Counted from the first letter of the stretch, positions 3,852 through 29,072 are shown. The stretch is DNA of 64,000 bases from Octopus bimaculoides (GCF_001194135.2 NC_068987.1:11873484-11937483), one strand, 5' to 3'. Translations and numbers: made by a program. The notes: generated by a model from the letters alone, not told the origin.

Positions 3852-3857
3852 TTTATT
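3852..3857 (-). terminator. Candidate polyadenylation signal AATAAA for the putative secreted-peptide gene
   Basis: tttatt on the plus strand, about 100 nt downstream of the stop at 3958. The hexamer is common in AT-rich DNA. Confidence 0.3.
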
Positions 3858-3957: not shown

Positions 3958-4129
3958 TCATTTTTTCGACACCGAGAAGTTAGGAACACAACTTGGATTC
4001 GCCAAACATCGTCGCATCTTCTGCATCAGTGCTCTCGTTACTGCAATGTTTCCGAGTTTTGAGCTCAATTGCGAGTATATACAGGGAAAACCCAGACATC
4101 TTGTATTGGCCGGAGGTCCTCGTCTGGCC
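3958..4129 (-). CDS. Putative terminal coding exon of a small secreted Cys-rich (neuropeptide-precursor-like) protein
   Basis: Strong acceptor on minus strand (gttttattttatttttatttttAG|G, AG at 4131-4130). Phase-2 frame reads ARRGPPANTRCLGFPCIYSQLSSKLGNIAVTRALMQKMRRCLANPSCVPNFSVSKK* (TGA at 3960-3958). It has dibasic RR sites and a C-x4-C-x24-C-x5-C pattern. The sequence is non-repetitive and more GC-rich than its flanks. Confidence 0.6.
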
Positions 4130-4360
4130 CTAAAAATAAAAATAAAATAAAACTTTTCATTAGAATTTCAAATGAAGAGAGCATGCGCAGGCACAAACGC
4201 AGAGGTACACACACATGACACACTCTAACACATTAAGTACTCAACATCGTCACGTACAAATAAACGATTTAAGGAGAAATTTAAGGACATGAATCTTATT
4301 ACTCTTAGAAAGCCTGCAAAAGGCTTTGCCCTTTCATGCAGACATAACTAATAACAATCT

Positions 4361-5060
4361 GCATAGGAGTGGCTGTGTGGTAAGTAGCTTGCTTACCAAC
4401 CACATGGTTCCGGGTTCAGTCCCACTGTGTGACGCCTTGGGCAACTGTCTTCTACTATAGCCTTGGGCCGACCAAAGCCTTGTGAGTGGATTTGGTAGAC
4501 GGAAACTGAAAGAAGCCCGTCGTATATATGNNNNNNNNNNNNNNNNNNNNNNNNNNNNNNNNNNNNNNNNNNNNNNNNNNNNNNNNNNNNNNNNNNNNNN
4601 NNNNNNNNNNNNNNNNNNNNNNNNNNNNNNNNNNNNNNNNNNNNNNNNNNNNNNNNNNNNNNNNNNNNNNNNNNNNNNNNNNNNNNNNNNNNNNNNNNNN
4701 NNNNNNNNNNNNNNNNNNNNNNNNNNNNNNNNNNNNNNNNNNNNNNNNNNNNNNNNNNNNNNNNNNNNNNNNNNNNNNNNNNNNNNNNNNNNNNNNNNNN
4801 NNNNNNNNNNNNNNNNNNNNNNTATATATATATATATATATATGCGTGTGTGTATGTTTGTGTGTCTGTGTTTTCCCCCGGCATCGCTTGACATCCGATG
4901 CTGGTGTGTTTGCGTCCCCGGAACTTAGCAGTTCGGCAAAAGGAGACCGATAGAATAAGTACTAGGCTTACAAAGAATAAGTCCTAGGGTCGATTTGCTC
5001 GACTAAAGGCGGTGCTCCAGCATGGCCGCAGTGAAATGACTGAAACAAGTAAAAGAGTAA
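4361..5060 (+). mobile_element. SINE family A (OR2-like: tRNA head, CORE-like segment, internal microsatellite, 3' half), full length with gap in spacer
   Basis: Head ggagtggctgtgtggtaag...ggttcagtccc...ccttgggcaa; tail catggccgcagt.aaatgactgaaacaagtaaaagagt. Many near-identical copies occur in the window. Confidence 0.85.
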
Positions 5061-7433
5061 GGATTTTCAGAGTTTCACACACACACACTAGGTATATGCC
5101 AGTGATCCTACTGACAATATTGTAGACACAAACACGGTGATAAGTGTTCCATACATATGGACGCTTTAAGCTTTTTTTGTTGTTGTTAGTTCAATTATAA
5201 GGTTTGTTGCAGATTTCAGAGCTTCTGTTCATTTTTCTGTTGCGTTTTTAAATGAAGGCGACTCAGTTCAAGGTTACCGCTATCAAGTGGAATTATCAGC
5301 GAAGCAAGCAGAATCTGGCTAAAACTGACCGATTTTTAAAATTAATTGTGAAGTTCAGACATCTGAAAATGTTCATTTAAGGAAAATCTAGTTTCATATC
5401 ACGTTAAAGTATAGGATGGCCCTATCAGTTCTGAGTAACGATAGTATGAATCACACTGTTCCCCCCCACACACACACACATTTGCGGTGTTTATGTGTGT
5501 GTGTGTGTACGTGTGTGTGTATGCGTCGGTATGTCTGCGTGCGTATGTGTATATGTCGGTATGTTTGCGTGTGTGTGTAATGCGTGCGCAATTTAAACAG
5601 CTGATATTTATACTTTAACAATCGATGACTCTCCTTCGACCATAACAAAGTTCATAAGTAGAGAATTGATGAATCACTTATCCTCTACTCACAGTCACAC
5701 ACACACATGTGTAAACTCTGCATGTTATCGTCCAGACGCCATATTTTCTGATAAAAGCGCAATGAAGGTTGAGATCGACGAAGCTGATTCCACCTTTTCT
5801 GTTCACGAAGGGAGTGTATTAAAAGGAAGTTGCCTACGACTGTCCTGTGTATGTAATGCAGTTTGATTTACTTATGCAGCGGGAAGAAACACACGGATCT
5901 AATCACTAGTGTACTACGTAATAATGTAACAACCATTGCTAAAGAATCCGTCATCAATTAAACGAAATACCTGTTGGGAATGCATTATTTATGCAAATCG
6001 GAACTGCCGACGGGGAGATTTTATATATGAAAAAGCAAACAAACAAACAAAGAGATAAAAAATAAAACATGTTTGAGATTGTTCTGGGTAATTAACGTTT
6101 TAACTGCACATGTGGTGTTGAGTGGCATTTGTAGATTTATCTATTCTGTAGTATATATATATATATATATATANNNNNNNNNNNNNNNNNNNNNNNNNNN
6201 NNNNNNNNNNNNNNNNNNNNNNNNNNNNNNNNNNNNNNNNNNNNNNNNNNNNNNNNNNNNNNNNNNNNNNNNNNNNNNNNNNNNNNAGAGAGAGAGAGAG
6301 AGAGAGAGAGAGACAAAAATCGAACACAAGGTATGTGTGTTGTTAGTTTGTGGGTCGGCTGCAGTTTCTAGGTGTACGAAAGTATAATCTCTCTTCACAT
6401 GGTATGAAAAAAAAAAAACACCTGAAGGTAAGCCATAGTCAAGCGAGATAACTCACATAGGTCCATTCTCGGAGCGACAGACATTAATGTTTCGTCGTTG
6501 TTGTGACTTATCAATACTGCATACCGAACAAGGCCCGCTGCAAGCCATACCGCCAGCTATGACTATATGCTAAATGGTTTAAACACTATCTGCTGGCATT
6601 TCCCAACGTTTCATGCCACAGAAAAACTTCAAATATGAATTAGAGGCAGCTGGAGGTCTTGTTCTGTATGCGGCATTGGTAAGTCACGACAATGACGAAA
6701 AAACTCATAGTTTTATCATTCGGTCAAACTGGATGTCTGCAATACTTTAACGTCTGTTCCAAATGCTATTGAACAACAGTTTTATTAAAGTTCCATCTTG
6801 AATCTGTATAGTTCAATCTTAATAACCGGTTATTTACAACATGTCACCTTCGTGATTTAAAATTATTTGATAACCTACAATTGCATAAGATTTTTCGGTC
6901 TTTATCTATCAAATGATTACTTGCGTTGATTATGTTAACGTTATTAAAAAGCAAGCAAACTTCTTTCTGAAACAGGAAATAAATGTACGAACCTGTGCCT
7001 TACAATATAAACATAGATTTTTGACCGCTAATCGAAAGGGGATTACTGATTAGGTGGCACTACATTCCTACTGCTCGACATAAGCTGGTTTTATCTTGTT
7101 AAATTCGCTTAGCATTGTAATGGGTATTATCAAAAAGTGTGTTTTGTGGTTGCTCTAGCTAAAACCAGTAAAATACGAAATGGTTTCTTGTTGCACAGGT
7201 ATGTCAACACAGTTTTTTGTTCTGCGAATTATCATACAAAAAAAAAAAAAATGCATAAAAATACGACATATTATTGTAACTGGATAGTATCAAAATCAGT
7301 GATAATTAGTTCTGGCATATAAAATGCTAAAATCGACTATTGTAAACAATAGACAATATTCTTACGTCAGTAACCTCGTATTCGACCTGACTTTGCCTGT
7401 TTCTGTATTTGTATTATTTGTAAACAAATTAAG

Positions 7434-7908
7434 ATGGTGGGCCGGCAGAATCGTTACAGTGCCGTACAAAATGCTTAGCTTCATTTCTTCCGGCTCTTTG
7501 CGTTCTAAATTCAAATGCTGTGGAGGTCGACTTTGTCTTTCATCCTTTCGAGGTCGATAAAAAATAAAACACCAGCCTAACACTAGGGCCGATGCAACCG
7601 ACGTACGCCCCCCCCCNNNNNNNNNNACTCATTTCCTTTGTAAGAATTTTGTCCTTGTCCCTGCATTATCATTTCATCTGATCGTAATGTGTGTGTGTGT
7701 GCGAGGGCGGCGAGATGGCAGAATCGTTTGTAGCCCGGACGCATTTCGCCCGCCTCTGCATTGTGAGATCAAATTTCGCCACAGTCGACTTTGCTTTTCA
7801 TCCTTCCGGGGTCGATAAAATTAGCGGCCGTTGAATACTAGGGCCGATATAATCATCTTAGTACCTCCCCCTCCACCGAAATTGCTGGCCTTGTGCCAGC
7901 ATTGAAAC

Positions 7909-7939
<31 letters not shown>

Positions 7940-8495
7940 CGCGAACGAGCGTACGTTTGATTCTGTAAAGGGTGTAAAGTCCAAATAGGTAGCACTGAAG
8001 GTGAGAAAATCTTTGAAAAATATGTCTCTGGCAATTTACAATTGTCACCTTTCTATGTTATTCTAAGTTGTAAGTGGTTATTTACTAGTTTTTGTCATTA
8101 CATCAAGAAAGAAATGGATGCACTCTAGAAAGAACTAGTTATAATTGTTCAAGACAAAATACTGATTCATTTCTCTTTTGTCATTCCATTGTGGTTATCT
8201 TGTTAAAAGTACTGAAAAGCAGTTCTAACAACAGAAGGAAATCGAAAATATAATCGATAATATTATCGCTATGTTTTAGGCGGCGAGCTGGCAAAATCGT
8301 TCGTACGCCGGGTGAAATGCTTAGCGGCATTTCGCCCGTCTTTACGTTCTGAGTTCAAATTCCGCTGAGCTCAATTTTGTCTTTCATCTTCTTTTGGGGC
8401 GGATAAAATAAATCCCAGTCGAACACTGGAGGCGATGTAATCGATTTACTCCCACCCCGAAATTACTGGCCTTGTGCCCAAAATTTGAAATTAAT
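7434..8495 (+). mobile_element. Cluster of three SINE family B copies (OR1-like; about 7434-7612, 7706-7910, 8279-8495)
   Basis: Head ggcggcgagctggcagaatcgttag, B box gagttcaaattcc, conserved core gtcgactttgcctttcatcctttcggggtcgataaa (Meta-type domain, by recall), tail ggccttgtgcc. Confidence 0.85.
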
Positions 8496-8796
8496 ATTTT
8501 TGTTTGTTTGGTAACGCTTTGGCAAGTCCAAATACACTCTGCCACATCGTTATTTTCATACCAAAGAAAATGGAATATCGTTAGAATTGAAACCACAGAC
8601 TCAATGAAGGATATTACAGTAACTACTTATCGCCGGATTCTAAATATATATATATCAATAAAAATTATATTTCACTTTTTAAAATATTTATTTACAGATC
8701 ACTAGTCTTTCGAATAATATAAATAACATAAATGTTGTTTACGTAAAAAAAAATTATGTCTTCAGTTTTATTTCGTAGTTTAATACATAATTGTCC

Positions 8797-9115
8797 TACG
8801 AATAAATGTTACTCTTGATTTCGTTTCGTTGTTTATCAGCGGATTGTGTTACGATTAATATAAATGTTATTTCTATAACAAATTATGACATTAATTTTAT
8901 TCCATAGTGTAACAAAGTAATTACCTTACGAATAAATGTTACAGTCGATTTCGCTTCATAGTTTATCTGTGAACTGTGTTACGATTAATATAAATGTTGT
9001 GCGAGAGCTAGATTATATCACTGATTTCGTTCCATAATTTATCAGTTAATTCTTTTAGGCAAAATACAACTGTTGTATGTATAATAGATTATGTCATAAA
9101 CTTCATTCCATAGGA
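8797..9115. repeat. Degenerate tandem duplication, period about 130 bp
   Basis: tacgaataaatgttac...gatttcg...tgtgttacgattaatataaatgtt recurs at 8797 and 8927, with a partial third copy after 9020. Confidence 0.8.
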
Positions 9116-9401
9116 AAGATAACGCTTGCTTAAAGTGTTACTTACGTAAACCATAGCAAAATCATATTATAGATATCTGATTATATATATATATATATAC
9201 AGGGAAATCAAAAATAAAAGCAAAAACAGGAAAAACAGCAAAAGTCAAAAGGATGTACACAGTGAATATATTCGATTAACGCTCAGAGAAAGTTTAAGAT
9301 GGAATAAAGAAGTGGTGTGAGGTTTCGAGCATGGCTCTTCGTCAGAAAGAAGAAAAAAATCCAGAGAAAAGGAAAAGAGTAGTCCGAGAGAAGTAGGCGT
9401 G

Positions 9402-9445
<44 letters not shown>

Positions 9446-10120
9446 GCAAATATATCTATCTATATACACGCTTCAATCGCGTAGAAAGGGTGGAGTCGAT
9501 GGGGTGGTCCATCTTGGGCGGCGCTTTTATGGGGGTAACATTTTTGTGTCTGCTGCATAAGCCTGTATAGGGGACAGGAGCGGCAGACTGAAGGGCAGTC
9601 CAAGGCGGCACACTCTCTAGCTAACACCACTCCCATACATCTGTCTCTCCCGCTCTCTATCAGTCAGTCTCCCTCCCTCCTCCTTTCTGTATTTTTCTAG
9701 ATGCAGTAATGGCCGAATGGTTAAGAAATTCGTATCGCGTTCACGGGATTTCCAAGTTCGTTTCCACTTTATGGTATCTTACGCAAGTGATATTTTAGAT
9801 AGTCTTCGGTTTCCAAGCTTTGTGAGTGAAATTTGGTTGAGGGAAACGGTGTGGAAGCCTGTTGGATTGTACTTAGAATTCAAAGTCTTGTCACACGCTG
9901 TATCTGATAATTATGTTAAGGGTACACGCGTGTCTCTGGATCACACACGCATACACACATTCTTTATTTGAAATCACTACAATTATTTCGACACATTTTT
10001 ACACACATAGTACATTTGTGGGTTGTGTAATCATCCTCACGGATCCAAGATGATAAAATGCGCCGCTTCAGGCGATTGTTTAAACAAGTCATTTTACTCG
10101 AATCTTATATATATATATAT

Positions 10121-10545
10121 ATAGGCGCAGGAGTGGCTGTGTGGTAAGTAGCTTGCTTACCAACCACATGGTTCCGGGTTCATTCCCACAGCGTGGCACC
10201 TTGAACAAGTGTCTTCTACTATAGCCACGGGCCGATCAAAGCCTTGTGAGTGGATTTGGTAGATGGAAACTGAAAGAAGCCCGTCGTATATATGTATATA
10301 TATATATATGTATTTGAGTATATTTTTGTGTGTCTGTGTTTGTTCCCCCACCATCGCTTGACAACCGATGTTAGTGTGTTTACGTCTCCGTAACTTAGCG
10401 GTTCAGCAAAAGAGATTGATAGAATAAGTACTAGGGTTACAAAGAATAAGTCCTGGAGTCGATTTGCTCGACTAAAGGCGATGCTCCAGCATGACCACAG
10501 TCATATGATTGAAACAAGTAAATGAGTAAAAAAGTGTGAAAAGAG

Positions 10546-10547
<2 letters not shown>
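10121..10547 (+). mobile_element. SINE family A, full length
   Basis: Both halves are present with a (TA)/(TG) spacer. Confidence 0.9.
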
Positions 10548-10576
<29 letters not shown>

Positions 10577-10699
10577 CACGCACACAAACAAGTTAAATAC
10601 ACATATCTCGTTGGGATTTGGACACATTTATATTGAAATGTAGTTAAGGAAAATCATAGGATTGTGACTGGAATAATCTTTGTCGGTAATGGCTTTGTA

Positions 10700-11000
10700 T
10701 AAATGGCGTAGGAAGTGGGATTTGAAGAAGCTAATGCTGACGATGTTCGGAATATTGCATTCTGATGATGTCAAAACTTTAAGTAGTCAACAGAATCGCA
10801 AGTGTCCAGTTCAGACAACGAAAAAGAAACTTAACTGTAACAGATTTTAACAACAGAAGTCTTATCTAAAATTTAGTGAAGAAGTCTTTACTTCAGAGCA
10901 ACTTTCAGAAAAGGTCTAAATTTTGAAGGAAGCATGAAAATGCATCATTAAAGTACAATAAAACGTCATTAAAGATTTTTTTCATCGGCAAATAGAGGCA
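10700..11000 (+). pseudogene. Decayed pogo/Tigger-like transposase C-terminal fragment
   Basis: MA*EVGFEEANADDVRNI at 10703-10756 resembles the acidic C-terminal region of pogo/Tigger transposases. Many stops and frameshifts follow. Confidence 0.4.
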
Positions 11001-11579
11001 AGAGCCTAAAGTATATGCTCTTAGCTAACTAACTAGCGGTGTTCTTAGTGTGATTTCAATGCAAGTGGATATACTGTAGGGATTCATTGGTTTTGTATAC
11101 AAGAAAATTCAAAGGGGTTTGTAGATCTAGATGGATCTTGTAAGGACCATGTTCACGATGATGTGCAATCCGAGGTTCTTAAGGAAAGGTTGCAAATTTT
11201 TCCTAAATTTATCTGTTGTTTGCTGTTTACACTTATGCTACGTCAATGGTCCGTCGTCTCGGTATAACCACCACTAATGCCCGAGAAGTACGAAGGTGAT
11301 GTAGTTGGCTCAGTCTGATGAAGCCACTGATCTCTGCTCAATTGTTCGCTTCTATGCTTACCTCGTTATTTAATTATCTTACGAAGGAAATGGAGAACAA
11401 AATAGAATCTTTCACCAAGGTTTCTAACTTATGCAGAGCATACCAAATAGATAATAATAATTATATTAATAATAAAAAAACTGGTTTACATAACGTAGAA
11501 AATTCCAGCTTAGTTTTGCACGGTGGTTGTCATAAGCACGATGTCCTTGAAGATAGTAAAATTTTACAGAGAAAGAGAA

Positions 11580-11667
11580 AGAGAGACTGAGAGAGAGACA
11601 AAGAGAGAGAGAGACAAAGAGAGAGAGAGACAAAGAGAGAGAGAGACAAAGAGAGAGAGAGAGAGAT
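11580..11667. repeat. (GA)n with 16-bp higher-order unit gagagagagacaaaga x4
   Basis: Directly visible. Confidence 0.9.
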
Positions 11668-11861
11668 GACGGAACCAGTAGCTCACATAGACGTAGACAT
11701 GGCTAGGGTAGACGCTTTGAATCGAAACTATTTAGCTGAGAAAATCTACTGATTAAAAATAAATACAGTGAAATTTATAGGTAAATCTAATTTTCAATAT
11801 CATGCGAAATATACCAAGAACTTCATTAACTGTTAAAAGAATTTCAAATATTATTTCGATA

Positions 11862-12048
11862 TAGGCGCAGGAGTGGCTGTGTGGTAAGTAGCTTGCTTAC
11901 CAACCACATGGTCCCGGGTTCAGTCTCACTGCGTGGCACCTTGGGTCGATAAATTAAGTACCAGGTACGCACTGGGGTCGATGTAATCGACTTAATCCCT
12001 TTGTCTGTCCCCTCTATGTTTAGCCCCTTGTGGACAATAAAGAAATAA
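11862..12048 (+). mobile_element. Chimeric SINE: family A head fused to family B body and Tx1-like tail
   Basis: Family A sequence runs to caccttggg and then switches directly to gggtcgataaattaagtacc...ccccttgtggacaataaagaaat. Confidence 0.8.
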
Positions 12049-13337
12049 GGAAGTGGAACGAGACCAGCTTATTGTGAAGAGCACAGGACATTGCAGTAAT
12101 GCTAGAAAAGACGGATAACACGGTAAATCTATGAGCCAGAGTTGAGAGATTGTGTTAGCGAGTAACTTAGTCACGTTAACTGATCATTGCTATGAAGTCA
12201 ATAAAGTTATGAAGTCAATAAAAATATAGCCAAGTTTCGGATTAGGCGACTTGTACTTCATGGGTTACGGAAGTGGGAAGTAGGGCAAAACATAAAAAAA
12301 AAATTAGAATTAAAAAAAAAATCAGGATAGTATCGTAATGTCGTAATCCCTGTTGACGAAACACAGTAATCCTCAAAAACAAAAGTAATAAATAAGATAA
12401 AAATGAAGGGGAAAAAATAACCTTTTCTTTTCCCGTGAGATATGGTGCGCCTAATCTAAAACTCCGTTTCAGTCGATATAGAAAGAAGTAAAGTAAGGTA
12501 ACTGCTTATATGTAGTACCAAGTAAATGTTTTATGTAGAAATAGTATAAATTCAGCATTTGCTGAATTTGAAAACGAAACCTATGGTTTACGATACATCC
12601 TTATTTATATAAGAATAATTAAACTGTGGGAATCCCGAAAACATTTTGAGAAATTGCATGTGATATACGGCTTTTGGTTATACAGTATCTCTCTTCTTGG
12701 TTCAAAATGCCTAGATGTAAAAGGTACGAAAAATACAACAGCCAGTCGGCGCTCTCGAATGGCTATGGTTTGATAATTTGTATTAAGTCTTAGTTAATTG
12801 TTTTAGTGTGCAATGTATTGGGCTGTCAGATAAATTAGTTCGTTATTCCCCACCCGCCAATTTATTTTATATTTTCCGAGGTTAATTGAATTAACATGAA
12901 AAATATTCTTATCATAGTGTTTTATGGTTTCTGGTAGCTTTGTTCGACTACGATTGTTGCTTATCGCTTCTGAAATTCGAATAAATTTTACCTTTTTTCA
13001 GACATATGACGATGGAGTTGTACCAAGTGAGAAAAAGAAGAAAAGAATTTATTTGACAACTCATGTTGTTGCAAGCAAAACACAGACACCCTCTCGGTTC
13101 CCCACAGCCTTTCCCCCATGGAAGAGCTCCATCAGCACCCAACTGGTACTTGCTACAGCTGAGTAGACTGGTGCAACCGGAAATGCAGTGTATTGCTGAG
13201 AGGCACAGCGCGTCGCCTAGCTCAAGAAGTGAAACCACGACTTTATGATCATGATCCAAACTCCTGAAGAACTAGGTCATTTGACTCTACTGCCAGATTA
13301 TTATACTTCATTAAATGTCTTGCTAGAAAAAGAAATG

Positions 13338-13550
13338 TGTCGTAATATATTCTTTTGGCGCAAAGCCAATAATTTCAGAGGAAAGAGATAAGTCGATTAC
13401 ATCGACCTCAGTGCACAGTTGGTACTTATTTTATCGACTCTGAAAGGACGAAGAGCAAAGTCGACCGTGGCGAAATTTGAACGTAGAATGTAAAATGGGA
13501 AGAAATACCGCTAAGCATTTCTGTCCAGCGTGCAAATGATTCTGCATACT
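13338..13550 (-). mobile_element. SINE family B
   Basis: Reverse complement of the core and head. Confidence 0.8.
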
Positions 13551-13674
13551 CGCTGCCTTTATGCTATATATAGGCGAAAAACGCAAAAAATTGCACTGAA
13601 ACTGGTATGTCGTCATGCCTAGCTTTGAAGACCAAAGTAACCAAAAGGCATGAACATTGGCTAAATTGTTAACA

Positions 13675-13878
13675 TTACTCTTTTACTCTTTTACTTGTTT
13701 CAGTCATTTGACTGCGGCCATGCTGGAGCACCACCTTTAGTCGAGCAAATCGACCCCAGGACTTATTCTTTGGAAGCCTAGTACTTATTCTGTCGTTCTC
13801 TTTTGCCAAACCGCTAAGTTACGGGGACGTAAACACACCAGCATCGGTTGTCAAGCGATGGTGAGGGGACAGACACAG

Positions 13879-13915
<37 letters not shown>

Positions 13916-14075
13916 CGACGGGCTTCTTTCAGTTTCCGTCTACCAAATCCACTCACAAGGCTTTGGTCGGCCCGAGGCTATAGTAGAAGACACTTGCCCA
14001 AGGTGCCACGCAGTGGGACTGAACCCAGAACCATGTGGTTGGTAAGCACGCTACTTACCACACAGCCACTCCTGC
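13675..14075 (-). mobile_element. SINE family A, full length
   Basis: Reverse complement of the 10121 copy with high identity. Confidence 0.9.
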
Positions 14076-14419
14076 TTAAAGGTTAATCAGGTGGTAGTCT
14101 TTAAGAAATTGATCGGGTCGCTCACGTTCGTAGCTATTATAACCTCATGAGGAAGTGAATGATTTTATAGTGAAATAATCAAATTTCAAAATAATTCCGG
14201 TTAATGCATTTAACTTGATGTTATGATTACACAACTACCTTCCCTCATATGGTATTGACGTATTAAGAAGCAGCAAGTTACGTTAGAAGCATCAAGTGCT
14301 ATTTGGAACATTTTACAAACATGACTGGCATTCTTATTTCAATAACAACGATACGAAAAATAGCTTCAGTTAACAGAAAGTTTGATTGTAATTTAATGCA
14401 AACATATGCGGCGATCTGA

Positions 14420-15040
14420 CAGAAACGTTAGCACGCCGGGCGAAATGGTTAGCGGGATTCCGTCTGTCTTTACGTTCTGAGTTCAAACGCCACCGAGGTC
14501 GACTTTGCCTTTCATCCTTTCGGAGTCGATTAAATAAGTACCAGTTACGCACTGGAGTCGATATAATAGACTTAATCCATTTGTCTGTCCTTGTTTCTCC
14601 CCTCTGTGTTTGGCCCCTTATGGGCAGTAAAGACATAAGAAACGTTAGCACGCCGGACGAAATGCTTAGCGGGATTCCGTATGTCTTTACGTTCTGAGTT
14701 CAAATTCCGCTGAACTCAATTTTGTCTTTCATCTTCTTTCGGGGTCGATAAATTAAGTACCAGTTGCGTACTGGGGTCGATCTAATCGACTGGCTCCTTA
14801 CCCCAAAATTTCGGGCCTTGTGCCTAGAGAAGAAAAGAATCGTTACCGAGCCGGACGAAATGCTTAGTGAGATTTCTTCCGGTTCTTTGCATTCTCAGTT
14901 CAAATTTCTTCTGGGGTAGACTTTGCCTTTCATCTTCTCGGAGATGATAAAATCAACACCAGCTGAACAATGGAATCGGTATAATCGATTAACCCTATTC
15001 CACCTCAAAATTTCAGGCCTTGAGCTTATAATAGAAACAT
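14420..15040 (+). mobile_element. Head-to-tail trimer of SINE family B monomers
   Basis: Monomers start at about 14420, 14640 and 14838. The first carries the Tx1-like tail; the others end in the ggccttgtgcc tail. Confidence 0.85.
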
Positions 15041-15457
15041 TCTAATCTAAATATTAGAAATTATTCAAGAAAACAAAAGAATAAATTTAATTTAAGGCGG
15101 TAGCCACAGTCAGATAACAGAAACAAATAGAAGAATTGATGTAGCAGGTGGTATTCTGAAAAATTTGTCGTTTGGCAGCATGATGTTTCGGTTATTCTGC
15201 AAGAGTAGCTTCTAAGCATTTTCGAGTTAGCGATTCCTTCTGCACACTTTCACCACATGAATTAAAAAAATATTTGTTACAACATTCTAAAGAACAGCAA
15301 TTAATTTCGCAATCTGTGGAAAATATAATTAATTCATTTTCCTATTCAAAATTGAAATATTTTTAAAACGGTGATCTAAGTTTTCCATCTGTGGTTTTCA
15401 TTTTCCTAATGAACATGTAATTCACTGTGAAGTATATAATTAATTATTATTAGAGGA

Positions 15458-15815
15458 AACGCTACGTTCTGAGTTCAAATTCTACCGGGGTCGACTTTGC
15501 CTTTCATACACTTTCGGGGTCGATAAATTAAGTACCAGTGAAACATTGGGGTCGATGTAATCGACTAGCCCCCATCCTTACAATTTCAGGCCTTGTGCCT
15601 ATAGTAGAAAGGATTATTAGGGAGAGGAAAAAGGTGGCGAGCTGGTAGGGTCGTCAGCAAATCAGACAAAATGCTTTGCGGCATTTCTTCCGGCTCCTTA
15701 TATTATAAGTTCAAATTCCACGGAGGTCGACTTTGTACCAATTGAGTATTGGGGTTCATGTAATCAACTAGCCCCATCCCCCACCCAAATTTCTGGCATT
15801 CTATCTATCGTAGAA
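15458..15815 (+). mobile_element. Two further family B copies in tandem
   Basis: About 15458-15618 and 15634-15815. Confidence 0.75.
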
Positions 15816-17298
15816 AGAACTCTGCGAGACAGGAAAAGGTGTATTTGTGTTGCCCCCCCACCACTGTGTAACAACCAGTGTTCATTTGCTTACGTCTCCG
15901 TAACTTATCGATTCAACAAGAGATCAACTGAATAAATTCCAAACTTAAAAAAATAAGCACTGGGATCGATCCGTTTGACTAAACCCTTTAAGGTTGTGCC
16001 CCAACATGGCGGTAGTCCAATGAGTGGAACAAGTGAACGATAAAAAAAAAATTGCAGCCACAAATGTTTCATTGGCATAAAATGTATTGCCAGTTCAACA
16101 TGAATTTTCAGATGCACCACTTAGACCCATCGCCACTGTTGTTTCCAGGGATCACTGGGAGTTCCGGCTCTTACAGCATACAAATCCCCATCCACCCGAC
16201 TCAACATAGGTCGATTAAACTTAGATGTGGGTCCGAGCTGATCTATGCTTCTCCTGATTCCACCGATTACATCTTTCCAATCAGAACCACGTAGAAGCTT
16301 TCACAGCAGTTAATCATTGCTGATTATTATAGCATTTATGCTGTTTCACATTAGCTTCGTACGATCAATATGATGGTACCATATTGTAACTGTCTCTGGA
16401 TTGATCTCCCACGTTAATTCAATTTCTATATTTCTGTTAAAACTTTTATTTTCTGGAAATTATCAGCTATTTTCTAATATGCTTGTCATCATGTTAATGG
16501 GATATTTTCGCACTAAAGTCAAACAAAGAATTATAAAAAATTGCACTAATGCTCATACTCAAAATACACAGAAGATACACAATATTTGTAAAAAACGATA
16601 TATGGAAAGTTCTGATTGTCAGTTAAGTTGATTCTGTTTTGGCTGAACTTCTAGTTAAACTCACAAAGCTTATACAGAAATTGATTCTCTTCTCTATATT
16701 TGCTCATTAACTTAAAGTAAATTGTTTATTAGATTCTTAGAAGAGAATATGTTAACTGCTGTCAAATCAAAAAAGTATGCGTTCGAAAAAAATATACTGT
16801 AGATATACACAGTGATCGAGTGCAAAGTGTTTTGATATGGAAGGATAATGATAAACTAAACAGTATCTTAGGAAATATATACGTTGGAAGGAGACGGTGA
16901 GGAGGAAGGATGAAGTGTTGATAGTGCTGCATTGGTTAGAATGATAAAGTGAAGTGTAGATGGTGAGATGGTGAAACAGATAGAGAATAAGAATGCTTCC
17001 GATACACAAATACATTAACCCAAGCATGGAAAGAAAGAAATATAACATAATATATATATATGCGTAAAAAGGAAGACAAATACAAGTAGGCTTGATAAGC
17101 ATATTTACATGAAATACAAATAAACAAAAGGAATTATGTAATTGTCTTATCTTGACAGCTGTTCCAGGTGAAACTATGGGTTATGCCAAAACAATGTCTA
17201 TTACGTAATAAAGAGCTGTAATATCGTAGGTGTATGGAATAACACGAATTTTTATAGATCCATGAAGTTATGTTATCCGTTACACTCACCAGAAGACG

Positions 17299-17339
<41 letters not shown>

Positions 17340-17341
<2 letters not shown>

Positions 17342-17596
17342 CTCTCTTTTACTCTTTTACTTGTTTCAGTCATTTGACTGTGACCATGCTGGGGCACCGC
17401 CTTTAGTCGAGCAAATCGATCCAAGGACTTATTCTTTGTAAGCCTAGTACTTATTCTATCGGTCTTTTAGCCGAACCGTTAAGTTACGGGGACGTAAACA
17501 CACCAGCATCAGTTGTCAAGCAATGCTGGGAGGACAAACACAGACACACAAACATATATACACACATACATATATATATATATACATATATACGAC
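17340..17596 (-). mobile_element. SINE family A, 3' half (rest in gap or absent)
   Basis: Reverse complement of the tail and 3' half, ending at an N-gap. Confidence 0.85.
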
Positions 17597-17821
17597 NNNN
17601 NNNNNNNNNNNNNNNNNNNNNNNNNNNNNNNNNNNNNNNNNNNNNNNNNNNNNNNNNNNNNNNNNNNNNNNNNNNNNNNNNNNNNNNNNNNNNNNNNNNN
17701 NNNNNNNNNNNNNNNNNNNNNNNNNNNNNNNNNNNNNNNNNNNNNNNNNNNNNNNNNNNNNNNNNNNNNNNNNNNNNNNNNNNNNNNNNNNNNATATATA
17801 TCGTCAATGTATTATATATCC

Positions 17822-17861
<40 letters not shown>

Positions 17862-18180
17862 GTATATGTAAAGAGAGGGATGGGGAGAGAAAAATAGGTA
17901 GATATAGATATAATTGACGTCACAACAATTTTATGAACTCTCTCGAGAACGTGAAATAATTCTTTTTTTTTTGCAGCATAGGACCTCGAAGCACAGATAA
18001 AGCCTTAAATAACAGCATGTAAATATTGGGTTCAGGAACCCTTTTGGATAGATAAAGTCAAAGGCTTCCCGGGCAGCTTTATGTAGTATGCTTCGAGATC
18101 CAGTGATCCAAAAAAGAATTACACACATACACGCACACAGAGTTTTGGTTGGGACAATACAGCAAGGCAGGAGGAATAAA

Positions 18181-18427
18181 GGTAAAGGTAAACTTTCCTT
18201 CTCGAGTCATACCGAGAAGGGGCGGTTTCTTGGTTTCTGCGACGTATATATTTCCCACCTGGACGCCGGTCTGTCGCAGGATTGCTCGTTTTGCCAGCTG
18301 AGTGGACTGGAGCAACGTGAAATGAAGCGTTTTACTCAAGAACACAACGCGTCAGCCGGTTCAAGAATCGAAACCACAATCTTACGATCATGAGTCCAAC
18401 ATCTAAACCCCTAAGCCACGCACTTCC
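18181..18427 (-). mobile_element. SINE family C
   Basis: Reverse complement of the head ggaagtgcgtggcttag...; contains ctgcgacagaccggcgtcc (V-domain-like). Confidence 0.8.
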
Positions 18428-18428
18428 G

Positions 18429-18773
18429 CAGGCCAAGTGGTTAGTGCAGCGGACTCGTGGTCGCAGGATCACGGTTTCAATTCTCAGACCGGGCGTTGTA
18501 AGTGTTCATTGAGCGAAAATACCTAATGCTCCACGAGGCTCCGGCAGTGGGTGGTGGTGAACCCTGCTGTACTCTTTCACCATAATTTTCTCTCACTCTT
18601 TCTTCCTCTTTCTGTTGTACCTGTATTTCAAAAGGCCAGCCTTGTCACACTCTGTGTCATGCTGAATCTCCCCGAGAGGAGTGCTCAGTCACTTGCACGT
18701 TAATTTCACGGGCAGGCTGTTCCGTTGATCCGATCAACTGGAAGCCTCGTTGTCGTAACCGACGGAGTGCCAC
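18429..18773 (+). mobile_element. SINE family D (tRNA head, long body, tail gtcgtaaccgacggagtgcca)
   Basis: Related copies at 22535-22726 (minus) and 27016-27320 (plus, 5' part in gap). Confidence 0.8.
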
Positions 18774-18803
18774 GTTATCAGTCACGTTTCAAGAGAATAA
18801 GAA

Positions 18804-19131
18804 TATAATTATAAGTAAAACCAAGGTTTAATTCCGTGAGGTTAGTAAACAGATGTACAGAGTTTTAGAATTTCAAACGCAGAATTATATAATTATAAGT
18901 AAAATCATATAATTATATAATTGTATAATATTATATGATTATATAAAATTATATAATTATAAGTAAAATCAAGGTTTCTTTTATATAATTATATAATTAT
19001 AAGTAAAATCAAGGTTCTTATATAATTATATAAAATTATATAATTATAAGTATAATTATAAATAAAATCAAGGTTTCATTCCCTGAGATTAATATACAGA
19101 TGTACAGAGTTTTAGAATTTGAAACGCGGAA
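18804..19131. repeat. About 80-bp direct repeat flanking an expanded tataattataagtaaaatcaaggtt array
   Basis: Copies at 18804-18884 and 19051-19131 share cagatgtacagagttttagaattt.aaacgc.gaa. Confidence 0.85.
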
Positions 19132-19897
19132 GCAAATACGTAAGGCTTATTTTTTCTACTGAAGTCGACTCGTCGAGGTCAGTTTGGATTTCAGCTGATA
19201 AAATAAAGCACTAGCCAAATACTGGTGTCGTTGGTATTGGATAACTCCTCCCCTCATAATTGCTGGCCTTGTACCAAAATCAGAAATCAGCGTTTCAAAA
19301 GAGGTATTTTGAATATAAACGAGTGTCCATGTAAAAAATTGAGTCGCAAGTCCACTTCGTTATATCGAAATATATGTTTTAGATTTCATACTTATTACAC
19401 CTAAAAGTCTTAACTTATATTAGATTCTATACCTGAACTTTTGATCGTTGTCACAAATATAAACTTGTTTAACGCAGATATTTTAATGATTGTTCTTGAA
19501 TATTTTAGGTCTCATATATATATTTGTATATATATATANNNNNNNNNNNNNNNNNNNNNNNNNNNNNNNNNNNNNNNNNNNNNNNNNNNNNNNNNNNNNN
19601 NNNNNNNNNNNNNNNNNNNNNNNNNNNNNNNNNNNNNNNNNNNNNNNNNNNNNNNNNNNNNNNNNNNNNNNNNNNNNNNNNNNNNNNNNNNNNNNNNNNN
19701 NNNNNNNNNNNNNNNNNNNNNNAATGGCAAAGTAACCTCCAAATTTTTCCCTATGAAAATGTAGAAATATGCTACTCTACTTAAAATATCGCACGATCTT
19801 CAATTTAATGTTCGACAGTTTTATATATAATTATACATCATCACACATACACACTCACATATATAGATATATGCTTCACATCTTCTGAGTGTATAAC

Positions 19898-19946
<49 letters not shown>

Positions 19947-20397
19947 CTCTGTGTGTCTGTGTGAATACACACACGTACGCTATTTTTATGGTAGACTAAA
20001 ACTATTTAAGACCCTAGTAAGCAATCCTTTCAACGACCTCTAATTCATACGATATCTACAACCAATAAAGAAGAAATAGTACTATCTTTAGAATGCGAAA
20101 CAAATCAAACAGGACAGTAACAATGTAGAAAGACATTAACGAGACAGTGAAAGCGCATTCTTATATAACCGAGAAATTTTTCTCATCAGCTGCCGATCCG
20201 ATAACGTCAGGATTTCGACACTTTATGGTACATCATAATTTTCGATGGTGTCAAAAAACATTAAACGTGTATATATATATATATATATATACTGAGGGTG
20301 ATAAATTGAATATTAATTTAATTAACGTCAATTTAAAACCAGTGGCCTAGCATATAAAAAAATCTGAAAATTCAGAAAAATTGTATTACATGCGTAT

Positions 20398-20593
20398 AGG
20401 GATGACCACAAAGTGGACATCCGATATGATAGAAAGAGGTCATCAACGACCCAACCACAGAGAAAAGAAAAATAATGTTCTCCAAACACCTGTGTTTGCT
20501 GAATTTTTTTCTGGAGAACATTACTTTTCTTTGTGGTTGGGTCGTTGATGACCTCTTTCTAGCATATCGGATGTCCACTTAGTGTTCATCCCT
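20398..20593. mobile_element. Long foldback element, probably a Tc1/mariner-type MITE with about 82-bp TIRs
   Basis: Arms 20398-20484 and 20512-20593 pair at 78/82 positions plus a 5-nt bulge, with a 27-nt loop. The terminus ta-tagggatgaccacaaagt resembles the TIR of the 30041 MITE. Confidence 0.55.
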
Positions 20594-20899
20594 TCTTATA
20601 CGTATATACATAGATATATATGTATGTATGCGTGTATGTTTAGAACTGCAAGCGTTTTATAAGCATACACGTTACTTTATATGATATATTGCACCTGGTG
20701 AACAATAACCTCTTTGGTGAAAGACTACCAGCGCCTCAATCATTGGTTTGTTGGTCTGTTGCATTTTTGAAGGAAAAGTTATAAAAGCGTGCCTGAAAAA
20801 TCGTTGCCGAATAAGTATCCTCATGGCGTATTTTGAAAGCATTAACGCTTTCGGAACTATCGATGATATTTATATCTTTTATACACAAAACCACATGTG

Positions 20900-20930
20900 C
20901 GCACGCACGTACAAGCATGCACACGCACGC

Positions 20931-21027
<97 letters not shown>

Positions 21028-21270
21028 TACACACATTCTCTAACACATACATACACACAGTCTCTCTCTCTCTTACACACATACACATTCTCTAACACAC
21101 ACACACACATTTTCTAACACACACATACACACATACACACACACACATGCATACATACACACTCATACATACGCACATCCATACGTACGTACATATATAC
21201 ATTCATACATACATACACACATACGCACATACGCACATACATACATACATACATACATACATACATACAT
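20900..21270. repeat. (CA)n / (TACA)n compound microsatellite
   Basis: Directly visible; hosts the R4-like insertions downstream. Confidence 0.95.
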
Positions 21271-21285
21271 GCATGCATGTGTTAA

Positions 21286-21371
21286 CTACATCCCAAAGAT
21301 GGAGCCTTGTATCTTTGCTGGAAACTGGCTTCCTCCTCAATGGAAGATTTATAATAATCAAAAATAGAAGA
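21286..21371 (+). mobile_element. Isolated 3'-terminal 86 bp of the same R4/Dong-like family
   Basis: Ungapped match to 22086-22171, 67/86 identical by hand count. It also ends ...agaaga followed by tacatacatac. Confidence 0.75.
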
Positions 21372-21410
21372 TACATACATACATACATACATACGTACAT
21401 ACAAACATGC

Positions 21411-22171
21411 GTGATTGCTATTAAATACCTAATAAACTAAAGAGACAAGGAAGCTCTTGGAGTTCCTAGATGTCACTGTAAATATAGATTATGTCATATT
21501 TCTGTGGAAGACATCACACATTTGATTAGCAGCTGCCTAAAAATGTCATCTACCGCTCTATGCAACATGACGTTGTCGCAAAAACAATATACAATGCCTT
21601 TCGGAAAAAAAAAAGATTGTCCTGGAATTAATATAGAGAATCCCGCTGTTATTGGATACAAATACAAGTATCAGAACAAGAAATACTGGTGGGACATCCT
21701 CGTTAAAACATCTGTCAAATGTAAACATAACAAGTCGGAGATTGTTGTTTGGAAGAGACGAGAAAAAGTATGTGCCGCCAAAGAAGTCGGCTGTTCTGTT
21801 GATGTGAATATCTCTTTGAAAATGAGAGAGAAAGTAGATAACTATGGACAACTGCTGAGAAAACTCCTTCTTCTATATCCGGGTTACAATTTTACATTTC
21901 TACCAAAAATAATTGGAGCACTTGGTCTTGTAAGTAAATGTCTAACTGTAACTCTGGGTAAGTTTGGATTTTCAAAAACAGAAATCAACCAACTGATTCG
22001 CACATTACATATCCAATCTGTAAGGGAAACAGTAAAACTATGAAGACTTCTTCTCAGGTTTAAACTGTAACATTGTTTTCATTATCTACATTTCAAAGAT
22101 GGAACTTTGTATCTTTGTTAGAAACCAGCTCCTTACTCAGAGGAAGAATTTAAATGATTAAAAACAGAAGA
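21411..22171 (+). mobile_element. 5'-truncated R4/Dong-clade non-LTR retrotransposon (zinc knuckle + restriction-like endonuclease + 3' UTR)
   Basis: One frame reads VIAIKYLIN*RDKEALGVPRCHCKYRLCHISVEDITHLISSC...YWWDILVKT..HNKSEIVVW..EVGCSVD.N..K..EK..Y..L...PKIIGALG. This matches the CCHC and PD-(D/E)xK-like C-terminus of R4-type elements. It is flanked by (TACA)n on both sides. Confidence 0.85.
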
Positions 22172-22866
22172 TACATACATACAAACCAAAACATACATAC
22201 ATACATGTGTGTGTGTGTGAAGAACACTTAATCCGTTTGTCTGTCCTCTCTGTGTGTAGCCCCTTGTGGGCAGTAAAGAAATAAGAAACGTTAACACGCC
22301 GGGCGAAATGCTTAGCGGTATTTCGTTTGTCTTTACGTTCTGAGTTCAAATTCCGCCGACTTTGCCTTTTATTTCTTTCAGGGTCGATAAATTAAGTACC
22401 GGTTGCGTACTGGTCTCGATCTAATCNNNNNNNNNNNNNNNNNNNNNNNNNNNNNNNNNNNNNNNNNNNNNNNNNNNNNNNNNNNNNNNNNNNNNNNNNT
22501 ATATGTTTGTGCCAGTCCATCGCAGCGTCACTCAACAAACAGGAAGAAAGAGTGAGAGAAAGTTGGGGCGAAAGAGTACAACAGGAGTCGCCACCACCCA
22601 CTGCCGGAGCCTCGTGGAGCTTTTAAGTGTTTTCGCTCAAATAAACACACACAACGCCTGGTCTGGGAATCGAAACCGTGATCCTCCGACCACAAGACCC
22701 ATAACCACTGGGCCATTGCGCCTCTACACGTGAATTTATAGAAAAATAAAGATAAAATGGTAGGAAACAAATTATTTATAGTAAAACATTTAACAACAGC
22801 AGAGCATGTTAGGGAAACAGAATTACACAAACAGAGTGCAGTGCAAAATATATAAAAATTACTTAC

Positions 22867-22985
22867 AGTCTATATCCCGGTAAGTATAATGCATCCACGT
22901 TACTGACGGATGTATAGACAAGTATCAGAATGACTAGTCCGCATGTCCACATCGAGAATGGTGAAGAAGCTTGATGTTTTGACAT
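22867..22985 (-). CDS. Putative first coding exon (exon 22867-23011) encoding a signal peptide
   Basis: Acceptor gtttcgcttcttcattctAG|A (exon starts 23011), ATG at 22985, donor ACT|GTAAGT (22866-22861). Translation MSKHQASSPFSMWTCGLVILILVYTSVSNVDALYLPGYR(ct): hydrophobic core plus a V-D-A| cleavage motif. It ends in phase 2, matching the 4129 exon. Confidence 0.65.
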
Positions 22986-23185
22986 AGCACGTGGGTACAC
23001 TGAAGTGGAATCTAGAATGAAGAAGCGAAACTACGGTTATCCACGAAGTCGAAACTATTGTCCATATTTCAAGAGAATTGGAAATAATTATAATTTCAAA
23101 TGATTTGCACAAGCAATGAAAATAGTCTTGGCCTGAAATCGTTTTGTCGGTCATTCGTCTATTACACACACACACATGACACATG

Positions 23186-23221
<36 letters not shown>

Positions 23222-23234
23222 CACAATAAATACA

Positions 23235-23286
<52 letters not shown>

Positions 23287-23307
23287 CATAGATATGTATA
23301 TATATGT

Positions 23308-29008: not shown

Positions 29009-29072
<64 letters not shown>

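What the first reader, a model, noticed from the sequence alone, without database searches (positions are those of the whole stretch)
3958..23011. Hidden two-exon gene for a 96-aa Cys-rich neuropeptide-like precursor, invisible to the ORF track
Seen: two non-repetitive minus-strand segments with strong splice sites and matching phase 2, separated by an 18.7-kb intron (4130-22866). Joined they give MSKHQASSPFSMWTCGLVILILVYTSVSNVDA|LYLPGYRLA-RR-GPPANTRCLGFPCIYSQLSSKLGNIAVTRALMQKM-RR-CLANPSCVPNFSVS-KK*. Established: a signal peptide plus dibasic convertase sites plus paired Cys is the standard prohormone architecture. Inference: this is a secreted signalling peptide. The internal RR before the second Cys pair could yield either two looped peptides or a disulfide-linked two-chain hormone. 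From memory, the CxGFxC..C-x5-C layout recalls HIGA-type lophotrochozoan proneuropeptides, but the HIGA residues are replaced by QLSS; I cannot confirm orthology. Gaps in the intron could hide extra exons, and a non-coding first exon must lie upstream of 23011.
Basis: partly seen in the sequence, partly recalled or inferred. Interest (0 to 1): 0.82.

Follow-up and report, generated by a model that had tools for sequence, protein, structure and literature searches.

The report
Orphan octopus secreted-peptide precursor gene
The two minus-strand segments do join into a 96-residue secreted, prohormone-like protein, but this exact protein is already in UniProt as an uncharacterized Octopus bimaculoides protein, it has no detectable relatives, and neither its expression nor any hormone role could be tested here.

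Summary
ATG 22985 to donor CT|GTAAGT (22867/22866) plus acceptor AG|G (4130/4129) to TGA 3960-3958 gives the 96-aa protein exactly as written, with a phase-2 intron. All six assembly gaps in the range lie inside the intron, so the reading frame does not depend on them.

The gene is not hidden. The identical 96-aa sequence is UniProt A0A0L8HNW2 (Octopus bimaculoides, uncharacterized protein).

A generic screen found only these two exon candidates in the whole window. Sixty simulated windows gave no compatible pair.

The layout looks like a prohormone:
- a signal peptide of about 32 aa
- a 9-aa spacer, then RR
- a 35-aa basic peptide with a C-x4-C loop, then RR
- a 14-aa peptide with a C-x5-C loop, then KK and the stop

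No family could be assigned. Pfam, PDB, a 5.8-billion-protein search and a 1.84-billion-protein HMMER search found nothing real. HIGA, allatostatin C, molluscan urotensin-II-like and calcitonin-type membership each fail at least one defining feature.

The protein is absent from RefSeq and from Logan RNA contigs, and no orthologue is annotated in O. sinensis, O. vulgaris or Argonauta. Two control neuropeptide precursors are found in those sources.

Verdict: probably a real, lineage-restricted secreted-peptide gene. A signalling function is inferred only.

The parts
22986..23011 (-). 5' untranslated stretch between a possible upstream 3' splice site (AG at 23013-23012) and the ATG. There is no in-frame stop within these 26 nt. 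Kozak context is GCT ATG T, with a purine at -3.
   Evidence: sequence read directly
22867..22985 (-). Coding part of exon 1: M1 to the first two bases of codon L40 (119 nt).
   Evidence: tblastn 100%
22890..22985 (-). Predicted signal peptide, residues 1-32 (MSKHQASSPFSMWTCGLVILILVYTSVSNVDA), with cleavage after VDA.
   Evidence: Hydropathy and the -3/-1 rule. AlphaFold2 models a helix at 9-32 at low confidence. SignalP was not available.
22861..22866 (-). 5' splice donor GTAAGT (exon side ...AGACT).
4130..22866 (-). Phase-2 intron of nominally 18,737 nt. It contains six assembly gaps, SINE copies, microsatellites and a TE-like ORF. Its length is only an estimate.
4130..4165 (-). 3' splice region: branch-like CTAAT, then a T-rich tract TTTTATTTTATTTTTATTTTT, then AG.
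3958..4129 (-). Coding part of exon 2: third base of codon 40 to K96, plus TGA at 3960-3958 (172 nt). GC is 47% against 37% for the window.
4015..4119 (-). Predicted peptide 1, G44-M78 (GPPANTRCLGFPCIYSQLSSKLGNIAVTRALMQKM). It is flanked by R42R43 and R79R80, has a C51-x4-C56 loop, net charge +4, and no amidation signal.
3967..4008 (-). Predicted peptide 2, C81-S94 (CLANPSCVPNFSVS). It has a C81-x5-C87 loop and an N90-F-S sequon, and is followed by K95K96 and the stop.
3852..3857 (-). AATAAA polyadenylation signal 103 nt after the stop codon, followed by a genomic A13 run.

Best explanation
This is a real but lineage-restricted ('orphan') protein-coding gene of Octopus bimaculoides. It has two coding exons split by a long phase-2 intron.

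The proposed route of the 96-aa product:
1. It enters the secretory pathway through a signal peptide of about 32 aa.
2. Proprotein convertases cut at R42R43 and R79R80.
3. A carboxypeptidase trims K95K96.

The predicted products are a 9-aa spacer (LYLPGYRLA), a basic 35-aa peptide with a small C51-C56 disulfide loop, and a neutral 14-aa peptide with a C81-C87 loop. Neither peptide would be amidated. If R79R80 is not cut, the product is instead a single 51-aa piece with two disulfides. The peptides would act as extracellular signals (neuropeptide or hormone) through an unknown receptor.

Shown: the gene structure, the reading frame, the sequence motifs, and the identity to a public gene model.
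Inferred: transcription, secretion, cleavage, disulfide pairing, and any signalling role.
For: - The exon pair, phase and protein are verified.
- The identical 96-aa model was produced independently by the published genome annotation (UniProt A0A0L8HNW2).
- These are the only signal-peptide first-exon candidate and the only Cys/dibasic terminal-exon candidate in 64 kb on both strands, and they are compatible. Sixty simulated windows gave 0 compatible pairs.
- Exon 2 is GC-enriched, and both exons are non-repetitive.
- AATAAA lies 103 nt after the stop.
- The layout 'signal peptide, short spacer, dibasic, ~35 aa, dibasic, C-terminal cyclic peptide, basic end' parallels a mass-spectrometry-validated molluscan precursor, Aplysia apUII, whose pieces are 30 + 12 + 38 + 28 aa (PMC3493602).
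- A bona fide octopus neuropeptide gene, AstC, has the same build: 102 + 171 bp of CDS and a 24.3-kb intron (bioRxiv 10.64898/2026.02.18.706622). That precursor is also missing from annotated proteomes and turns up only in Logan RNA contigs. Absence from annotation is therefore weak evidence against a small gene of this type.
Against: - There is no evidence of transcription or of the exon junction.
- The protein is only in UniRef/MetaClust. It is not in RefSeq, EukProt or Logan contigs, and it has no orthologue in the O. sinensis, O. vulgaris or Argonauta proteomes. The control LFRFamide precursor is found in all of these, and AstC is found in two Logan RNA runs.
- No homologue appears among 5.8 billion or 1.84 billion proteins. 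The five non-self HMMER hits are long multi-repeat proteins; the two I inspected are Cys-free and repetitive.
- The peptides carry no amidation signal, and no peptide is repeated.
- The 2015 gene model could be purely ab initio.
- AlphaFold2 confidence is low (pLDDT 46).
- My chance screen was designed after I had seen the sequence.
Confidence: 0.45

Rival explanations
1. The gene model is spurious. A chance ATG-initiated hydrophobic ORF with a GTAAGT and, 18.7 kb away, a chance open frame behind a T-rich acceptor were joined by an ab initio predictor, and again by the first reader. Nothing is translated.
For: - There is no independent support: the protein is absent from RefSeq, EukProt and Logan and has no annotated orthologue in three other octopods, while a control precursor is present in all of them.
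- There are no homologues anywhere.
- The window is AT-rich, with 200 open stretches of at least 69 codons, 26 GTAAGT sites and 38 strong acceptors.
- Across a 2.7-Gb genome, even a chance rate of about 0.002 per window yields dozens of such pairs.
Against: - The two candidates are the only ones of their kind in the window, and they are compatible in strand, order and phase.
- The features are coherent beyond what a gene predictor scores: the -3/-1 cleavage site, dibasic sites that exactly bracket the Cys pairs, an even number of Cys, a basic C-terminal trim site, and AATAAA at a normal distance.
- Exon 2 is GC-enriched.
- A proven octopus neuropeptide gene of the same size and structure is likewise missed by annotation.
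Confidence: 0.27
2. The gene is real and the product secreted, but it is not a neuronal or endocrine signal. It could be a defence (antimicrobial) peptide, a salivary or venom peptide, a skin or sucker peptide, or a reproductive-tract peptide.
For: - Peptide 1 is cationic (+4, pI 9.9) and hydrophobic with a small disulfide loop, a composition seen in many host-defence peptides.
- Being lineage-restricted with no homologues is typical of fast-evolving effector or reproductive genes.
- Lack of amidation is more common outside neuropeptides.
- Expression limited to a rarely sampled tissue would explain its absence from Logan contigs.
Against: - The segment after the loop is not amphipathic (helical moment 0.05, lower than 96% of shuffles), which argues against a classic helical antimicrobial peptide.
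- It is a single copy with no tandem paralogues in 64 kb, unlike most toxin or antimicrobial-peptide families.
- Internal dibasic processing into several peptides is more typical of prohormones.
Confidence: 0.18
3. It is a highly diverged member of a known cyclic-peptide family: the somatostatin / allatostatin-C / urotensin-II-like group (C-terminal loop) or the calcitonin type (N-terminal loop followed by a helix).
For: - The precursor layout parallels Aplysia and oyster UII-like precursors. Both octopus loops start 'CL', as in CLWKVC.
- From the first Cys to the C-terminus is 14 residues in both sequences, and the ends resemble each other ([FW]-x-[VI]-S).
- The gene build resembles octopus AstC, and CLANPSC loosely resembles C-x-x-N-[PA]-x-S-C.
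- A C-x4/5-C loop followed by a predicted helix recalls calcitonin/CGRP.
Against: - BLASTP against the octopus AstC precursor gives no alignment even at E<=100.
- Ring sizes are x4/x5 against x6 for AstC.
- The WKV core, which is invariant from Aplysia to oyster to Capitella, is absent.
- Intron phase is 2 against 0 for AstC, as deduced from the 102-bp first exon.
- Protostome calcitonin rings have 7-9 residues and a C-terminal Pro-amide (PMC6002491), and neither is present.
- The helix is not amphipathic.
- Pfam and PDB searches are empty.
- Octopus already has its own canonical AstC.
Confidence: 0.07

Closest known systems
Lophotrochozoan urotensin-II-like precursors (Aplysia apUII, PMC3493602; Crassostrea Cragi-UII and Capitella, PMC8398477 supplement)
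   Same: Both are precursors of about 100 aa built as signal peptide, short peptide, dibasic site, a linker peptide of about 35-38 aa, dibasic site, and a C-terminal disulfide-looped peptide ending in basic residue(s). In both, the loop starts C-L, the peptide is not amidated, and 14 residues run from the first Cys to the end.
   Different: The family motif C[LI]WKVCPxxPW is absent. The octopus C-terminal loop has 5 inner residues rather than 4 and starts directly after RR, without an N-terminal extension. The octopus linker peptide carries its own Cys pair, whereas the UII-like linkers have none. There is no significant sequence similarity.
Octopus allatostatin C precursor (OvAstC, AVITACYFQAVSCY; bioRxiv 10.64898/2026.02.18.706622; 90-aa sequence recovered from Logan contigs L003/L004)
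   Same: Both are tiny precursors (90 vs 96 aa). Each has two coding exons (102+171 vs 119+172 nt) split by a very long intron (24.3 vs ~18.7 kb), and a cyclic non-amidated peptide at the extreme C-terminus after a dibasic site.
   Different: The ring is C-x6-C in AstC against C-x5-C here. AstC has no second Cys pair in its pro-region. Intron phase is 0 against 2. BLASTP finds no alignment at E<=100. AstC is seen in Logan RNA contigs and this protein is not.
Calcitonin / CGRP-type peptides (features as listed in PMC6002491)
   Same: Peptide 1 is 35 aa long with a small disulfide loop near its N-terminus, followed by a segment modelled as helical. The 4-5 residue ring spacing equals that of deuterostome calcitonin-type peptides.
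   Different: Protostome calcitonin-type rings have 7-9 residues. There is no C-terminal Gly for amidation and no Pro-NH2. The helix is not amphipathic. Pfam Calc_CGRP_IAPP gives no hit.
   Same: Both are secreted lophotrochozoan precursors with dibasic sites.
   Different: [quoted passage not shown] This protein has no repeats, no amidation signal and four Cys.

Membership tests
Generic neuropeptide/prohormone precursor | N-terminal signal peptide | tested here: met
   K3 in the n-region, an uncharged hydrophobic core at residues 13-24 (Kyte-Doolittle mean up to 3.4), and V30-D-A32|L33 fitting the -3/-1 rule. This is rule-based only; SignalP was not available.
Generic neuropeptide/prohormone precursor | Mono- or dibasic convertase sites that delimit the peptides | tested here: met
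   R42R43, R79R80 and the C-terminal K95K96 are read from the sequence. Actual cleavage was not shown.
Generic neuropeptide/prohormone precursor | Transcript expressed in neurons or endocrine cells, with processed peptides detectable | not testable with these tools
No Logan contig encodes the protein.
Generic neuropeptide/prohormone precursor | Conservation of peptide and Cys positions in related species | tested here: not met
   No orthologue was found in any annotated proteome or assembled contig searched, although control precursors were found in O. sinensis, O. vulgaris, Argonauta and Sepia. Raw genomes of other octopods could not be searched, so this is a weak negative.
Lophotrochozoan urotensin-II-like | C-terminal cyclic hexapeptide core C-[LIF]-W-K-[VY]-C followed by P-x-x-P-W | tested here: not met
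   The octopus loops are CLGFPC (internal) and CLANPSC (C-terminal, 5 inner residues). There is no W-K.
Lophotrochozoan urotensin-II-like | Precursor layout with the cyclic peptide at the C-terminal end after dibasic-delimited linker peptides | tested here: met
   The pieces are 32 + 9 + 35 + 14 aa here against 30 + 12 + 38 + 28 aa in Aplysia.
Allatostatin C / somatostatin-type | C-x6-C ring with the C-[YF]-F-[NQ]-x-[VI]-S-C core | tested here: not met
   The rings are x4 and x5. Octopus AstC is CYFQAVSC.
Allatostatin C / somatostatin-type | Detectable similarity to the same-genus AstC precursor | tested here: not met
   BLASTP gives no alignment at E<=100.
Allatostatin C / somatostatin-type | Shared gene structure (intron position and phase) | tested here: inconclusive
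   Both genes have two coding exons and a long intron, and the second exons are 171 and 172 nt. The first exon is 102 nt (phase 0, by arithmetic) against 119 nt (phase 2).
Calcitonin type | N-terminal Cys pair with protostome spacing of 7-9 residues | tested here: not met
   The spacing is 4 (peptide 1) and 5 (peptide 2). The criterion comes from PMC6002491.
Calcitonin type | Amphipathic alpha-helix after the ring | tested here: not met
   The helical hydrophobic moment of residues 57-78 is 0.05, and 96% of shuffles score higher. AlphaFold2 helices at 54-64 and 68-82 are low-confidence.
Calcitonin type | C-terminal amidation (Pro-NH2) | tested here: not met
   Peptide 1 ends ...QKM-RR and peptide 2 ends ...SVS-KK. 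Neither has a Gly donor.
HIGA (Platynereis) | [quoted passage not shown] | tested here: not met
   There is no internal repeat and no amidation signal. The family description is from PMC3890597.

The most novel reading that the evidence does not exclude
This is an octopod-specific, possibly recently evolved peptide-hormone gene. Its single small precursor releases two unrelated disulfide-looped, non-amidated peptides, or a disulfide-linked two-chain product, that belong to no known bilaterian neuropeptide family. A narrower version: one of them is the missing second ligand of the octopus AstC-receptor pair, because OvAstCR2 responds about 100-fold more weakly to the only AstC known.
Probability: 0.2. 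Interest if true: 0.6.

Novelty: new member of a known kind. Interest (0 to 1): 0.33.

Why it matters
If the gene is expressed and processed, it would add a lineage-restricted cyclic-peptide signal to the cephalopod peptide repertoire. It would be a candidate ligand for orphan cephalopod GPCRs. It would also be an example of new peptide-hormone genes arising in a lineage known for neural novelty.

There is also a practical lesson. Even the experimentally validated octopus AstC precursor, which has the same tiny two-exon build across a >18-kb intron, is missing from annotated proteomes. Exon-pair scans of this kind can therefore recover real peptide genes.

As it stands, the locus is one of many uncharacterized orphan models in a draft genome, with no expression evidence.

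Tried and rejected
The read-laying run was a single attempt using a run id that had appeared in the output. I did not pursue it further.
- Exact-protein look-up in public assemblies: nothing on record.
- Homology searches. The 5.8-billion-protein word-seeded search found only the protein itself. The exhaustive HMMER search of 1.84 billion representatives returned the protein itself plus five long multi-repeat proteins. The two I inspected (P0004, P0006) are Cys-free, repetitive and look bacterial, so I rejected all five as summed weak repeat matches. Pfam, PDB sequences and JGI metagenome contigs gave nothing.
- Paralogues in the window: none by tblastn.
- Literature. No paper in the library contains any of the peptide strings or the accession. 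The held parts of the De Oliveira 2019 mollusc supplement lack it, but those files were truncated when stored.
- HIGA was rejected on the family description.
- Calcitonin type was rejected on ring size, amidation and amphipathicity.
- AstC paralogy was rejected on ring size, intron phase and BLASTP.
- UII-like membership was rejected on the core motif.
- Structure prediction from the single sequence was too uncertain for a fold search (pLDDT 46).
- Rfam and tRNA scans of the window were empty.
- The long 222-codon open frame overlapping exon 1 (22903-23568) comes from a TA/CA microsatellite and is not coding.

Full report
1. What is in the sequence

On the minus strand an ATG at 22985-22983 opens a frame that runs 119 nt to a donor, AGA CT|GTAAGT (exon end 22867). 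An in-frame stop lies 17 codons upstream of the ATG. Unspliced, the frame stops immediately after L40.

At 4130/4129 there is a 3' splice region: a CTAAT branch-like site, then TTTTATTTTATTTTTATTTTT, then AG. An open frame of 172 nt follows and ends at TGA 3960-3958. 119+172 = 291 nt. An AATAAA sits 103 nt after the stop, at 3857-3852.

All six assembly gaps flagged by the scan's program lie within the intron. The nearest are 401 nt from the acceptor and 367 nt from the donor. No coding base depends on continuity across a gap. Only the intron length and the relative order of the two contigs depend on the scaffolding.

2. Is it more than chance?

Open frames and splice motifs taken singly are common in this AT-rich, microsatellite-laden window:
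- 200 stop-free stretches of at least 69 codons, the longest ones microsatellite-encoded
- 26 GTAAGT sites and 38 strong acceptors

I therefore enumerated, on both strands, every candidate matching either of two generic patterns.
- First exon: ATG, signal-peptide-like N-terminus, GTRAGT donor.
- Terminal exon: pyrimidine-tract acceptor, at least 40 open codons, at least 4 Cys, at least 2 dibasic sites, AATAAA within 300 nt.

Exactly one of each exists in the window. They are the two segments of the finding: same strand, correct order, compatible phase. Sixty synthetic windows from a third-order Markov model gave means of 0.12 and 0.18 candidates and never a compatible pair. The criteria were written after I had seen the sequence, so the true chance rate is somewhat higher. 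Over a whole genome a few chance pairs must exist.

Exon 2 is GC-enriched (47% against 37%), and both exons are unique in the window.

3. The gene is already public

The identical 96-aa protein is UniProt A0A0L8HNW2, 'Uncharacterized protein', Octopus bimaculoides. This identifies the organism. It also shows that an independent annotation pipeline joined the same two exons. So the gene is missed by an ORF track but not by the published annotation. No paper in the searchable library mentions the accession or any of its peptide strings.

4. How much independent support is there?

The database footprint is thin. The sequence occurs only in UniRef and MetaClust, in a cluster of one. No contig in the assembly collection encodes it.

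Two controls calibrate this.
- The O. bimaculoides LFRFamide precursor is present in RefSeq, EukProt and a Logan RNA contig. Its orthologues are found in O. sinensis, O. vulgaris, Argonauta and Sepiidae. Those sources therefore do cover octopods.
- The experimentally validated octopus allatostatin C precursor is a 90-aa, two-exon gene with a 24.3-kb intron. The search returned it only from Logan RNA contigs, not from any annotated proteome. Tiny two-exon peptide genes are thus routinely missed by annotation.

Taken together, absence from annotated proteomes is weak evidence. Absence from Logan RNA contigs is a modest negative, pointing to low or tissue-restricted expression, or to no expression.

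5. What the protein looks like

Residues 1-32 have the n/h/c organisation of a signal peptide, with VDA|L at the cleavage site. The rest divides as follows:
- LYLPGYRLA, followed by RR
- GPPANTRCLGFPCIYSQLSSKLGNIAVTRALMQKM (35 aa, net charge +4, C-x4-C loop), followed by RR
- CLANPSCVPNFSVS (14 aa, C-x5-C loop, NFS sequon), followed by KK and the stop

There is no Gly before any basic site, so no amidation is expected. No peptide is repeated. AlphaFold2 without an alignment gives only a low-confidence model (pLDDT 46) with helices at 54-64 and 68-82. As one helix, the post-loop segment is not amphipathic (moment 0.05).

The layout fits a small prohormone. Whether the four Cys form two local loops, cross-link two chains, or fold an uncleaved 51-mer cannot be decided from sequence.

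6. Family assignment

No statistical similarity exists to anything:
- Pfam gave nothing.
- PDB gave nothing.
- The 5.8-billion-protein search found only the protein itself.
- The exhaustive HMMER search of 1.84 billion representatives found the protein itself plus five long multi-repeat proteins. The two I inspected are Cys-free and repetitive, and I rejected all five as spurious.
- Metagenome contigs gave nothing.

I tested four families by their defining features.
Not met.
- Calcitonin type requires a protostome ring of 7-9 residues, an amphipathic helix and a C-terminal Pro-amide. None is met.
- Allatostatin C has a C-x6-C ring. The octopus already has a canonical AstC precursor, which I recovered as MHTQ...KRAVITACYFQAVSCY. 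It shows no BLASTP alignment to this protein even at E<=100. The gene builds are alike (102+171 against 119+172 nt, each with a long intron), but the intron phase differs.
- The lophotrochozoan urotensin-II-like family is the closest in architecture, and the MAFFT alignment places CLANPSCVPNFSVSKK under CLWKVCPAAPWLISK. However, its core C[LI]WKVCPxxPW is invariant from Aplysia to oyster to an annelid and is absent here.

I therefore file the protein under no named family.

7. Verdict

My estimates are:
- about 0.65-0.7 that this is a real gene
- about 0.45 for the specific reading that it is a real, lineage-restricted gene for a secreted, convertase-processed, disulfide-looped signalling-peptide precursor
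- about 0.27 for a spurious model
- about 0.18 for a secreted peptide that is not a signal
- about 0.07 for a very diverged member of a known cyclic-peptide family

The finding is correct as an observation. It is overstated as 'hidden' and as 'HIGA-like', and it is untested as a neuropeptide. Interest is moderate to low until a spliced transcript and conservation in other octopods are shown.

Noticed in passing
window 4348-4530, 10112-10294, 11852-11943, 31974-32156, 33148-33330, 48164-48346, 61492-61583: At least seven copies (63-93% identical) of a SINE-like element of about 170-180 nt with a tRNA-like head (GGCGCAGGAGTGGCTGTGTGGTAAGTAGCTTGCTTACCAACCACATGGTTCCGGGTTCAGTCCCAC...). One copy lies about 220 nt inside the intron from exon 2. 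Several copies abut microsatellites and assembly gaps, which suggests that SINE-plus-microsatellite junctions are where the assembly broke.
   Followed up: partly
window 14423-14581, 14640-14800, 14915-14999, 15491-15575, 42755-43074, 50267-50655, 7783-7867, 8295-8444, 22286-22435, 26236-26385: A second dispersed repeat family (core ...TTTGCCTTTCATCCTTTCGGGGTCGATAAATTAAGTACCAG...), often in tandem pairs about 220-230 nt apart. One copy lies in the intron about 430 nt from exon 1's donor.
   Followed up: no
window 21504-22043 (+), and a related fragment near 25200-25369 (+): A 179-aa ORF on the opposite strand inside the intron (…DILVKTSVKCKHNKSEIVVWKR…IIGALGLVSK…). From memory it resembles the C-terminal region of retroelement ORFs. 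It has no significant Pfam hit. A second fragment with the KCKHN motif lies outside the gene.
   Followed up: partly
window 23187-23381 and ORF 22900-23529 (-): A (TA)n/(GTATATAT)n microsatellite starts about 200 nt upstream of the ATG. It creates a 209-222-codon open frame that overlaps exon 1 in another frame, so an ORF listing shows this spurious ORF instead of the real short exon.
   Followed up: yes
loci L003 (265-612) and L004 (262-609), Logan RNA contigs SRR29271458 and SRR25158130: These contigs hold the full 90-aa octopus allatostatin C precursor (MHTQTLVCLFLLLTCSSMFIQAMALNEV...QRKRAVITACYFQAVSCY). The search returned it only from Logan RNA contigs, where it was called from an internal Met as a 73-aa product, and not from any annotated octopus proteome. 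This illustrates how small two-exon neuropeptide genes escape annotation.
   Followed up: partly
window 13671-13970, 40068-40367, 49243-49542 (with inverted partners at 10297-10535): A 300-nt dispersed repeat in three direct copies (79-92% identical) plus inverted copies next to SINE copies. It may be a composite element.
   Followed up: no
window 28677-29375 (+), 401-582 and 58024-58160: Trinucleotide arrays (GAT/ATG-type, CAT/CAC, AAC/CAG) give long His/Asn/Gln/Ile or Met/Asp-rich pseudo-ORFs. These look like low-complexity DNA rather than genes.
   Followed up: no
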